A stretch of DNA of 64,000 nucleotides from contig NC_069001.1 in NCBI RefSeq assembly GCF_001194135.2, forward strand, positions 39,800,080-39,864,079. Direction: 5' to 3'. Position 1 is the stretch's first letter; each line of letters begins with the position of its first letter. Positions 20,061 through 20,162 of this stretch are shown here, piece after piece. A program made the translations under genes and the position numbers. Source of the DNA: Octopus bimaculoides (lineage: Eukaryota). Below the pieces are notes generated by a model. It ran no database searches, was not told the DNA's origin, and was given only the letters and a program-made list of their open reading frames with translations.

Positions 20061-20162
20061 AATCAAGCAAATTACAACCCAAACCAACAAAGAGGTGGCT
20101 ATGTTAACCGTTCTTTCTCTGGTGTTGATGAGACTCAGTTGTATGAAAATCCAAAGTACAAG
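20061..20162 (+). CDS. Cav2: Candidate symmetric (cassette) Cav2 exon: NQANYNPNQQRGGYVNRSFSGVDETQLYENPKYK
   Basis: About 60 nt of T/C tract ends in attgtctcAG; donor AAG|GTAGCA. Length 102 nt (34 codons, phase 0/0), stop-free in the frame required by the flanking exons. TGCATG lies at 20225-20230 downstream. Confidence 0.72.

What the first reader, a model, noticed from the sequence alone, without database searches (positions are those of the whole stretch)
20061..20162. Hidden cassette exon places an APP-like YENPxY PTB-ligand motif in the Cav2 tail
Seen: a 102-nt phase-0/0 exon with a long pyrimidine tract, a weak donor (AAG|GTAGCA) and TGCATG 63 nt downstream. It encodes LYENPKYK (YENPKY at 20142-20159) and an upstream GYVNRSF (20097-20117). 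Established: APP/APPL carry GYENPTY, which binds the PTB domains of Mint/X11, Fe65 and Dab and acts as an endocytosis signal; Mint binds the Cav2 DDWC tail through a PDZ domain; (U)GCAUG downstream of an exon is the Rbfox enhancer position. Inference: inclusion could let one Mint molecule grip the channel through both PTB and PDZ domains, add a tyrosine-phosphorylation-gated internalisation or recycling signal, or let the channel compete with APP for Mint. I do not know of such a motif in vertebrate Cav2 tails but could not check novelty.
Basis: partly seen in the sequence, partly recalled or inferred. Interest (0 to 1): 0.85.

Follow-up and report, generated by a model that had tools for sequence, protein, structure and literature searches.

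The report
Annotated octopus Cav2 tail cassette exon
This is a real, alternatively spliced 34-codon exon in the tail of the octopus presynaptic calcium channel, but it is already in public gene models, and its APP-like YENPKY motif is found only in Octopus and has no tested function.

Summary
The sequence facts are correct. Window 20061-20162 is a 102-nt, phase 0/0 exon (tctcag|AAT...AAG|gtagca) that encodes NQANYNPNQQRGGYVNRSFSGVDETQLYENPKYK, and TGCATG lies 63 nt downstream.

RNA contigs from four Octopus-labelled organisms show every splice combination. Inclusion joins are 15762>20061, 20162>25020 and 20162>31932. Skipping joins are 15762>25020 and 15762>31932. It is therefore a true cassette exon.

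It is not hidden. UniProt A0A0L8G525 (O. bimaculoides) and RefSeq XP_036367714.1 (O. sinensis) contain it. A0A0L8G503 and an O. vulgaris isoform skip it.

It is also old. A phase 0/0 cassette sits at the same place in abalone, scallop, mussel, oyster and clam Cav2 genes. That shared exon has the core G-Y-[VI]-N-x-[ST]-[FY]-[ST] followed by acidic residues, which is the octopus GYVNRSFSGVDE.

The YENPKY half has no counterpart outside Octopus among 127 protostome Cav2 proteins. Binding to a Mint PTB domain is untested. The flank that follows the motif differs from APP's. The Rbfox argument rests on one hexamer, with about 0.12 expected by chance.

Verdict: an ordinary, annotated alternative exon that carries a lineage-specific candidate NPxY motif. 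Interest is low to moderate.

The parts
14543..14655 (+). Constitutive tail exon (RPPSFFQRIIGVMRTPSARSSQSIDSEHSDNETEGGH-N) that precedes the upstream exon
   Evidence: RNA contigs place ...TTCTGACAATGAAACAGAAGGAGGTCACAA directly before 15645. That string lies at 14626-14655. The peptide is present in P0007.
15645..15762 (+). Upstream exon (..VDRNHDKTTWQRSFSFLRRGSSRRKKDNSVQKSETASLQ), ending in phase 0. It is the branch point for four splice choices.
   Evidence: Contigs in X1, X3, X4, X5, X6, X7, X11 and X12 cover it. Several contigs stop exactly at 15762, as expected at a branch in the assembly graph.
19975..20060 (+). Long polypyrimidine tract and acceptor (…tttttttttattgtctcag|)
   Evidence: Read directly.
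20061..20162 (+). The cassette exon: 102 nt, phase 0/0, NQANYNPNQQRGGYVNRSFSGVDETQLYENPKYK
   Evidence: Spliced contigs with 0 mismatches occur in organisms A, B, C and D. It is residues 1387-1420 of UniProt A0A0L8G525.
20097..20132 (+). Conserved core of the exon, GYVNRSFSGVDE. The molluscan consensus is G-Y-[VI]-N-x-[ST]-[FY]-[ST]-x-[DE]-[DE].
   Evidence: Alignment of 12 mollusc cassettes gives N16 invariant and Y14 in at least 90%. A profile built from 3 non-octopus exons finds this stretch in the six-frame window as joint-best of 3732 fragments, with domain i-Evalue 0.19.
20142..20159 (+). YENPKY, a [FY]xNPxY-type motif found only in Octopus among the sequences examined
   Evidence: It is absent from the orthologous exon and from the whole tail of all non-octopus Cav2 proteins examined.
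20163..20168 (+). Weak donor GTAGCA
   Evidence: Read directly. The other donors in the gene are GTAAGT, GTATGC, GTAAGC and GTGAGT.
20225..20230 (+). Single TGCATG, 63 nt downstream of the exon. Consistent with chance; no evidence of function.
   Evidence: about 0.12 TGCATG are expected per 300 nt of this window. No GCATG lies within 300 nt downstream of the orthologous exon in L002, L003 or L004.
25020..25145 (+). Second, independent cassette exon (SIEMKDVGRR...KLNKDE, 126 nt, phase 0/0)
   Evidence: Joined to the cassette in X1, to the upstream exon in X6 and to 31932 in X25. It is skipped in X3, X4, X5 and X11. It is conserved in Haliotis (L001, P0014).
31932..32248 (+). Constitutive tail exon (PSEKQDFSWGL...DVGFASAVSNIVDQAH...HRKHRGG)
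   Evidence: One search gives the contigs and the loose ends on both sides. Homologues occur in other molluscs.
45507..46377 (+). Last coding exon. It carries the RKLPAVP proline motif and ends ...DEDDDWC*.
   Evidence: The sequence that follows 32248 in RNA contigs maps to 45507. DDWC plus the stop codon is at 46363-46377. The frame is checked.

Best explanation
Window 20061-20162 is a genuine, frame-preserving alternative cassette exon of the Octopus Cav2 (type A / cacophony-type) calcium channel alpha-1 gene, and it is already annotated. It inserts 34 residues about 135 residues after the IQ domain, into a C-terminal tail that has no recognised domain.

Shown:
- The exon is spliced in or skipped independently of the next cassette exon (25020-25145), giving four tail isoforms that all end in DDWC.
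- It is the octopus version of an old molluscan cassette exon. The conserved part of that exon is G-Y-[VI]-N-x-[ST]-[FY]-[ST] followed by an acidic run.
- The YENPKY in the 3' half is found only in Octopus among the sequences examined.

Inferred:
- Inclusion adds short linear docking or phosphorylation motifs to the channel tail, and so changes trafficking or anchoring of that isoform.
- The ancestral function most likely sits in the conserved core. That core holds a YxN tyrosine, a Ser/Thr followed by acids (casein-kinase-2-like) and an aromatic residue.
- The Octopus-only NPxY is at most an added, lineage-specific adaptor site.
For: Sequence anatomy.

Inclusion junctions: 15762>20061 in X3 (a 5499-nt contig, organism B) and X11 (organism A). 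20162>25020 in X1. 20162>31932 in X3, X11, X4 and X5.

Skip junctions: 15762>31932 in X5. 15762>25020 in X6.

The spliced exon is also seen, with identical nucleotides, in organisms C and D.

Rough contig depths differ between runs. In X4 the upstream exon is at 6.4 and the spliced cassette at 5.9. In X12 the upstream exon is at 116.5 and only an unspliced contig, at 18.7, covers the cassette.

All four isoforms stay in frame.

Annotation: UniRef100_A0A0L8G525, A0A0L8G5M3 and A0A0L8G6E5 and XP_036367714.1 contain the exon. A0A0L8G503 and O. vulgaris CAI9738066.1 skip it.

Gene identity: Ion_trans and Ca_chan_IQ domains, the DDWC end, and RefSeq names.

Orthologous cassette: it was found in genomic loci L002, L003, L004 and L006, with AG/GT borders and phase 0/0. 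It is in RefSeq isoforms of Haliotis, Gigantopelta, Argopecten, Mytilus, Crassostrea, Saccostrea, Ostrea, Mercenaria and Ruditapes, with skipped isoforms in the same or related species.
Against: No functional data of any kind exist for this exon.

The depth comparison uses assembler contigs of unknown tissue, not read counts. The three raw-read runs available had no reads on the gene.

The sequence match between the octopus exon and the other molluscan cassettes is short. A profile domain i-Evalue of 0.19 over the window corresponds to about 5e-5 per fragment, and two AT-rich intronic YIN..F chance hits scored similarly. Orthology therefore rests partly on position, phase and exon status.

The conserved Tyr is Val in Haliotis, so even the YxN reading is not universal.
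Confidence: 0.8

Rival explanations
1. The included exon provides an APP-like YENPxY ligand for the Mint/X11 PTB domain. One Mint molecule then holds the channel through both its PTB domain (on the exon) and its PDZ-1 domain (on DDWC), or the channel competes with APP for Mint.
For: The core Y-E-N-P-x-Y-K matches APP's YENPTYK at 6 of 7 positions. The literature states that the Mint PTB domain binds APP YENPTY, that Mint PDZ-1 binds the Cav2 DDWC end, and that the PTB/PDZ module is conserved across animals (PMC11405698; PMC5371672). YENPxY appears by chance in 0.02% of shuffled tails.
Against: The motif is absent from the orthologous exon and from the whole tail of every non-octopus Cav2 examined. 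This holds even though Mint, DDWC and APP-YENPTY are conserved in those animals.

The residues after the Tyr depend on the next exon (KSIEMK or KPSEKQ). Neither resembles APP's KFFEQ flank, which from my memory of the X11-APP structure (not checked here) contributes to binding.

No binding test is possible with these tools.
Confidence: 0.1
2. The NPxY works, but as a general tyrosine-based sorting signal for other NPxY readers. Candidates are the endocytic PTB adaptors (Dab, Numb, GULP/CED-6, ARH) or FERM-type recycling and anchoring proteins (SNX17 family, kindlin or talin, which read integrin beta-1 NPKY). The signal would set surface lifetime or recycling of the exon-containing isoform.
For: [FY]xNPxY is the general consensus for these readers. 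Many PTB proteins besides Mint bind YENPTY (PMC5371672). NPKY is, from my own knowledge, the distal integrin beta-1 motif. There is precedent for alternative Cav2 tail exons carrying tyrosine or adaptor motifs (e37a; cited in PMC5818475). The generic motif arises by chance in 1% of shuffled tails.
Against: The same lack of conservation outside Octopus applies. The motif lies about 135 residues from the IQ domain and far from the membrane, whereas classic endocytic NPxY signals are membrane-proximal (my own knowledge). There are no data.
Confidence: 0.2
3. The YENPKY is a fortuitous, recently arisen string with no reader. The exon's function lies wholly in the conserved core (G-Y-[VI]-N-x-[ST]-[FY]-[ST]-acidic) or simply in tail length and spacing.
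For: Only the core is conserved across cephalopod, gastropod and bivalve cassettes. The 3' halves differ completely between lineages: SSPV..KRRVHF in oysters and mussels, SSGIYVVS.HYK in clams, and nothing in abalone. The first-stage scan picks out striking strings after the fact.
Against: The exact YENPxY is rare by chance (2e-4 per tail). NPx[YF] is otherwise absent from the tails examined: none in about 50 non-octopus tails, against roughly 8 expected by shuffling over all 55 tails, many of which are redundant isoforms. A new NPxY in a membrane-protein tail is therefore not obviously neutral.
Confidence: 0.45
4. The exon is a phosphotyrosine switch. After Src-family phosphorylation, the YxN tyrosines (Y-V-N, conserved; Y-E-N in Octopus) would recruit a Grb2/Drk-type SH2 domain.
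For: The Y-[VI]-N is the best-conserved tyrosine context in the cassette. Phospho-Tyr682 of APP's YENP is reported to bind Shc and Grb2 (PMC5371672). Src-dependent inhibition of molluscan Cav2 is documented, though at a different tyrosine, in the EF-hand (PMC5818475).
Against: Haliotis has Val in place of this Tyr, and Gigantopelta has Y-H-N. There are no phosphorylation data. The preference of Grb2 SH2 for pYxN is my own knowledge and was not tested here.
Confidence: 0.1

Closest known systems
The homologous C-tail cassette exon of other molluscan Cav2 genes (RefSeq isoforms of Haliotis, Argopecten, Mytilus, Crassostrea, Ostrea, Mercenaria, Ruditapes)
   Same: Same position, between the ...RRGSS...[ST]xQ exon and the ...DFSxGLxPEH...GFASAV exon. 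Same phase 0/0, and length a multiple of three (75-147 nt). Included in some isoforms and skipped in others. Shared core G-Y-[VI]-N-x-[ST]-[FY]-[ST]-acidic.
   Different: The 3' half is lineage-specific, and only Octopus has NPxY there. I found no paper that describes this cassette. The Aplysia Cav2 splice survey (PMC5818475) lists a different C-terminal site.
Mammalian Cav2.2 exons e37a/e37b (and the long/short C-terminal exon 47 variants of Cav2.1/Cav2.2)
   Same: Alternative splicing of the Cav2 C-terminus changes tyrosine-based or adaptor-binding motifs, and through them trafficking and modulation. See PMC5818475 and the references in it to Raingo 2007 and Macabuag & Dolphin 2015, and PMC10666670.
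   Different: e37a and e37b are mutually exclusive exons in the proximal EF-hand region and carry YxxPhi/dileucine AP-1 motifs. This exon is a simple cassette distal to the IQ domain, with an NPxY-type string.
APP/APLP cytoplasmic GYENPTY motif
   Same: The core Y-E-N-P-x-Y-K is identical except at the x position (T in APP, K here). It sits in the cytoplasmic tail of a neuronal membrane protein that shares the partner Mint.
   Different: APP's motif is conserved from cnidarians to mammals and is constitutive (PMC11405698). Here the motif was found only in Octopus, sits in an optional exon, has different flanks, and has no binding evidence.
Integrin beta-1 distal NPKY motif (kindlin / SNX17 site)
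   Same: The same N-P-K-Y tetrapeptide in a cytoplasmic tail (my own knowledge).
   Different: The integrin motif lies within about 45 residues of the membrane. No relation to integrins is implied. This was not tested.

Membership tests
Alternatively spliced cassette exon | Spliced inclusion junctions on both sides | tested here: met
   15762>20061, 20162>25020 and 20162>31932 are seen in RNA contigs.
Alternatively spliced cassette exon | Junctions that skip the exon in the same organism | tested here: met
   15762>31932 in X5 and 15762>25020 in X6, both organism B. Annotated skipped isoforms are A0A0L8G503 and CAI9738066.1.
Alternatively spliced cassette exon | The reading frame is preserved with and without the exon | tested here: met
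   The exon is 102 nt, phase 0/0. All four isoforms read through to DDWC*.
Cav2 (type A / cacophony) alpha-1 subunit C-terminal tail | Four Ion_trans repeats, an IQ domain, a DDWC-COOH PDZ ligand, and orthology to named Cav2 proteins | tested here: met
   Pfam on P0007 finds Ion_trans and Ca_chan_IQ at 1173-1251. DDWC* is in the window. The best hits are RefSeq 'type A subunit alpha-1' and cacophony proteins.
NPxY-type ([FY]xNPx[YF]) PTB/FERM-domain ligand or sorting signal | Match to the consensus in a cytoplasmic region | tested here: met
   Y-E-N-P-K-Y lies at residues 28-33 of the exon. The tail follows the IQ domain and is therefore cytoplasmic.
NPxY-type ([FY]xNPx[YF]) PTB/FERM-domain ligand or sorting signal | Conservation of the motif in orthologues | tested here: not met
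   The motif is identical in O. bimaculoides and O. sinensis. It is absent from the orthologous cassette and from the whole tail of every non-octopus mollusc or protostome Cav2 examined. For squid, only a skipped cDNA is available, so decapodiforms are untested.
NPxY-type ([FY]xNPx[YF]) PTB/FERM-domain ligand or sorting signal | Direct binding to a PTB or FERM domain, or motif-dependent internalisation | not testable with these tools
   No binding or complex-modelling tool is available for sequences outside the window.
APP-type Mint/X11 PTB ligand | A C-terminal flank like APP's (Y-K-F-F-E-Q) in addition to YENPxY | tested here: inconclusive
   The flank here is KSIEMK or KPSEKQ, depending on the next exon. 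That the flank is required is recalled from the X11-APP structure paper, which could not be read here.
Rbfox-enhanced exon | (U)GCAUG within about 300 nt downstream of the exon | tested here: met
   One TGCATG at 20225-20230.
Rbfox-enhanced exon | The site exceeds chance or is conserved | tested here: not met
   About 0.12 TGCATG and 0.26 GCATG are expected per 300 nt in this window. No GCATG lies downstream of the orthologous exon in L002, L003 or L004.
Rbfox-enhanced exon | Neural or Rbfox-dependent inclusion | not testable with these tools
   The tissues of the runs are coded. The raw-read runs had no reads on the gene.

The most novel reading that the evidence does not exclude
On an ancient molluscan Cav2 tail cassette, the octopus lineage evolved a canonical YENPxY around a pre-existing exon-terminal tyrosine. 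This motif is read by a PTB adaptor such as Mint. Splicing would then switch the channel between single-point (PDZ-DDWC) and two-point (PTB plus PDZ) scaffolding, or tag one isoform for NPxY-dependent endocytosis or recycling. That would be a lineage-specific, splice-gated way to set presynaptic channel number.
Probability: 0.1. Interest if true: 0.6.

Novelty: new member of a known kind. Interest (0 to 1): 0.3.

Why it matters
Cav2 channel number and position at the active zone set release probability, and both are controlled through the C-terminal tail. A splice-gated adaptor motif would be a simple lever on synaptic strength in an animal with a large, independently evolved brain.

This check leaves a smaller result. 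The exon and its alternative use are already in the databases. The part of the exon that selection has kept for hundreds of millions of years is the GYVNxSFS-acidic core, not the NPxY.

Two useful outputs remain. The first is a conserved molluscan Cav2 tail cassette that I could not find described in the papers searched. The second is a cheap, well-defined peptide-binding test for the Octopus-specific YENPKY.

Tried and rejected
1. My first protein query had about 17 wrong residues at its start, from a manual frame slip in the upstream exon. The correct peptide is, and the hits to the 31932 exon were unaffected. That search returned only prokaryote-style ORFs on mollusc contigs.

2. A word-index search with the exon plus 7 flanking residues found no candidate. 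Earlier attempts failed on parameter limits.

3. Runs holding the 31932 exon (X25, X29, X32, X34) had no contig over the upstream exon, so they gave no skip information.

4. The raw-read runs X24, X45 and X46 had no reads on the gene at about 6% sampling, so no read-level inclusion ratio could be obtained.

5. I tried to find RNA runs of the L001 species in order to read the exon before its d1 homologue. L001 later proved to be abalone, not a cephalopod.

6. Runs X15, X16, X19 and X36 were laid on the exon to compare flanking introns between species. X15, X16 and X19 gave only spliced RNA contigs over the exon, and X36 gave no contig on the exon or its unique flanks. Intron and TGCATG conservation within Octopus could not be measured.

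7. The 100% nucleotide identity of the exon across organisms A-D is not evidence of special constraint. The 317-nt exon at 31932 is also identical between A and B.

8. A second profile hit, KYINEHFTM at 30526-30606, was rejected as an exon. A stop follows immediately, there are no splice sites, and it looks like an AT-rich chance match.

9. SDNPMYP in L003 at 9079 was rejected because it has no exon structure.

10. P0008, a repetitive 2464-residue protein, matched the exon through VYETRQY-type repeats. This is a chance match.

11. Searches of solved structures with the tail and with the motif peptide found nothing.

12. No paper contains 'YENPKY'. The X11-APP structure paper and the Borg 1996 paper are not held.

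13. The Argonauta model is truncated before the tail, and the squid cDNA and squid Logan fragment lack the region. No decapodiform or nautilus test was possible.

Full report
WHAT IS THERE.

Window 20061-20162 (+ strand) reads tctcag|AATCAAGCA...AAGTACAAG|gtagca. A T/C-rich tract of about 80 nt precedes it. It translates without a stop as NQANYNPNQQRGGYVNRSFSGVDETQLYENPKYK.

GYVNRSF is at 20097-20117 and YENPKY at 20142-20159. TGCATG is at 20225-20230, 63 nt downstream. The donor GTAGCA departs from the consensus at +4, +5 and +6.

THE GENE.

The neighbouring coding exons are:
- 14543-14655
- 15645-15762 (...QRSFSFLRRGSSRRKKDNSVQKSETASLQ)
- 25020-25145 (SIEMKDVGRR...KLNKDE)
- 31932-32248 (PSEKQDFSWGL...DVGFASAVSNIVDQAH...)
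- 45507-46377, ending ...DEDDDWC*

A search of 1.8 billion representative proteins with the 34 residues returned a 1857-residue protein that holds them at 100% identity, at positions 1387-1420. It is UniRef100_A0A0L8G525, a Cav alpha-1 model; a member of the related 90% cluster, A0A0L8G503, carries the name Octopus bimaculoides. It has Ion_trans repeats and the Ca_chan_IQ domain at 1173-1251. Its closest relatives are RefSeq 'voltage-dependent calcium channel type A subunit alpha-1' (Cav2/cacophony) proteins.

The exon thus lies about 135 residues after the IQ domain. That part of the tail has no Pfam domain and no relative among solved structures.

IS IT A REAL, ALTERNATIVE EXON? Yes.

Logan contigs of RNA runs show the following joins.

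Inclusion:
- 15762>20061, in a 5499-nt contig of X3 (organism B, 0 mismatches, so the window's species) and in X11 (organism A)
- 20162>25020, in X1
- 20162>31932, in X3, X11, X4 and X5, read from the loose ends

Skipping:
- 15762>31932, in X5
- 15762>25020, in X6

Other: 25145>31932, in X25.

The exon and the next one (25020-25145) are therefore two independent cassettes. All four combinations keep the frame to DDWC.

Organisms C and D also carry the spliced exon with identical nucleotides.

Contig depths hint at sample-dependent use. In X4 the upstream exon is at 6.4 and the spliced cassette at 5.9. In X5 the skip contig is at 3.5 and the inclusion contig at 3.0. In X6 and X12 only a contig colinear with the genome (unspliced) covers the cassette, at 3.9 and 18.7, against 11.1 and 116.5 for the upstream exon.

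These are assembler depths from coded samples, not read counts. The three raw-read runs had no reads on the gene.

IS IT HIDDEN? No.

Three UniProt O. bimaculoides models (A0A0L8G525, A0A0L8G5M3, A0A0L8G6E5) and O. sinensis XP_036367714.1 contain the cassette. O. bimaculoides A0A0L8G503 and O. vulgaris CAI9738066.1 skip it. The cloned squid cDNA (Heterololigo bleekeri BAA13136.2) lacks both cassettes. The exon and its alternative use are already in public annotation.

HOW OLD IS IT, AND WHAT IS CONSERVED?

I first looked at genomic loci fetched around homologues of the 31932 exon. L002, L003 and L006 are unidentified mollusc contigs, and L004 is Crassostrea. Each has a phase 0/0 exon with AG/GT borders between the ...[ST]xQ exon and the DFSxGL exon. 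Examples are L003 IHNGYINDTFSTDEEGTVSLRIPKIFIVSDLYE and L006 ...GYVNESYSNDEDDSTWTDQSSGIYVVSTHYK.

A profile built from three non-octopus exons was searched against all six-frame fragments of the window. The cassette was the joint-best of 3732 fragments. The match was GYVNRSFSGVDE, at a domain i-Evalue of 0.19, which is about 5e-5 per fragment.

RefSeq isoforms then confirmed the picture:
- Haliotis: AHKNRFTGVVNNSFSIDEQDEIDAE
- Gigantopelta: GHRGYQGGYHNNSYVIDERDEYLDE
- Argopecten: ...GGYVNSSFSCEEDDE...
- Mytilus: ...GCYINSSFSLEDESDD...
- Oysters: ...GPWYINTTFTMNDEDD...
- Clams: ...HGYINDSFSTDE...

In each group, other isoforms or species skip the exon. These include C. virginica X17, M. trossulus X3, the Lymnaea cDNA, Littorina and Pinctada.

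In the 12-sequence alignment the Asn of GYVN is invariant and the Tyr is present in at least 90%. A Ser/Thr, an aromatic residue and an acidic run follow.

The 3' halves are lineage-specific, and the octopus TQLYENPKYK aligns to gaps. Across 127 protostome Cav2 proteins, NPx[YF] occurs in the tail only in Octopus.

HOW SPECIAL IS THE MOTIF?

In shuffles of the 612-residue octopus tail, [FY]xNPx[YF] appears in 1% of shuffles and YENPxY in 0.02%. It is the only NP.Y in the three + frames of the window.

So it is a rare string. It was, however, picked after the fact, and it is not conserved where conservation could be tested.

The literature confirms the premises. The Mint PTB domain binds APP YENPTY. 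Mint PDZ-1 binds the Cav2 DDWC end. Both modules are conserved across animals (PMC11405698). Many other PTB proteins (Fe65, Dab1, Numb, GULP) read the same motif, and phospho-Tyr682 recruits Shc and Grb2 (PMC5371672).

No paper contains YENPKY. The Aplysia Cav2 splice survey lists a different C-terminal site (PMC5818475).

After the tyrosine the octopus sequence continues KSIEMK or KPSEKQ, depending on the next exon. Neither resembles APP's KFFEQ.

RBFOX.

There is one TGCATG. About 0.12 are expected per 300 nt in this window. No GCATG lies downstream of the orthologous exon in three other mollusc loci. This is compatible with chance, and nothing more can be said.

MOST LIKELY MECHANISM.

Shown: an optional 34-residue insert in a domain-free cytoplasmic tail, with an ancient conserved core and an Octopus-only NPxY.

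Inferred: the insert adds short linear motifs that change adaptor docking or phosphorylation of the tail. The ancestral function most probably lies in the conserved core, which holds a YxN tyrosine, a Ser/Thr followed by acids, and an aromatic residue.

For the YENPKY itself, my estimates are as follows:
- No function: about 0.45.
- A general NPxY sorting or recycling signal: about 0.2.
- The specific Mint PTB two-point grip: about 0.1.

VERDICT.

The exon is already known from annotation. The motif is a candidate new member of the NPxY class. Interest is 0.3.

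Noticed in passing
window 25020-25145: A second, independent phase 0/0 cassette exon (SIEMKDVGRR...KLNKDE, 126 nt). It is included or skipped regardless of the first cassette. It is conserved in abalone (L001 257-376; Haliotis rufescens isoform X9).
   Followed up: partly
window 32089-32091 (inside exon 31932-32248): The O. vulgaris isoform X9 (P0012) joins ...KLNKDE directly to SPLGSPMASPS. 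This implies an internal alternative acceptor (cctcag|AGT at 32091) that removes 53 residues. It was not checked against RNA here.
   Followed up: no
between window 32248 and 45507 (not found; probably in an N gap near 42-44 kb): Annotated isoforms (O. sinensis X2, O. bimaculoides A0A0L8G503) carry a tyrosine-rich acidic micro-exon, YFYEDYY[FY]DDG, after ...HRKHRGG. RNA contigs break 27-30 nt after 32248, as expected at a branch. A degenerate DNA search did not find the micro-exon in the window.
   Followed up: partly
window 1338-1844 (+): A 169-codon open frame with a weak DDE_3 transposase match (E 4e-4, below Pfam's cut-off). It is probably a decayed Tc1/mariner-type element in an intron.
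   Followed up: partly
window 15645-15762: Organism A contigs differ from the window at 5 of 117 positions in this exon (for example T>C at 15681). The cassette exon and the 317-nt exon at 31932 show 0-1 differences. The uneven divergence is unexplained.
   Followed up: no
window 20056-20166 and 31880-31931: Some RNA-labelled runs hold contigs colinear with the genome across exon borders: X12 and X6 over the cassette, and X29 upstream of 31932. These indicate unspliced pre-mRNA, intron retention or DNA carry-over. In X12 the depth is 18.7, against 116.5 for the upstream exon.
   Followed up: no
tails of P0007-P0136 (protostome Cav2 proteins): NPx[YF] is absent from every non-octopus tail examined. 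About 8 occurrences were expected by shuffling over the 55 anchored tails. Many of these tails are redundant isoforms, so this is only a hint that such motifs are avoided in Cav2 tails.
   Followed up: partly
window about 2300-3350, 8310-8530, 42000-44000, 51040-51520: Runs of N (assembly gaps; 2929 N in all) and many TA/CA/GA microsatellites in the introns. RNA runs pile up heavily on repeat segments such as 18452-18615, 20704-20879 and 23520-23695.
   Followed up: no
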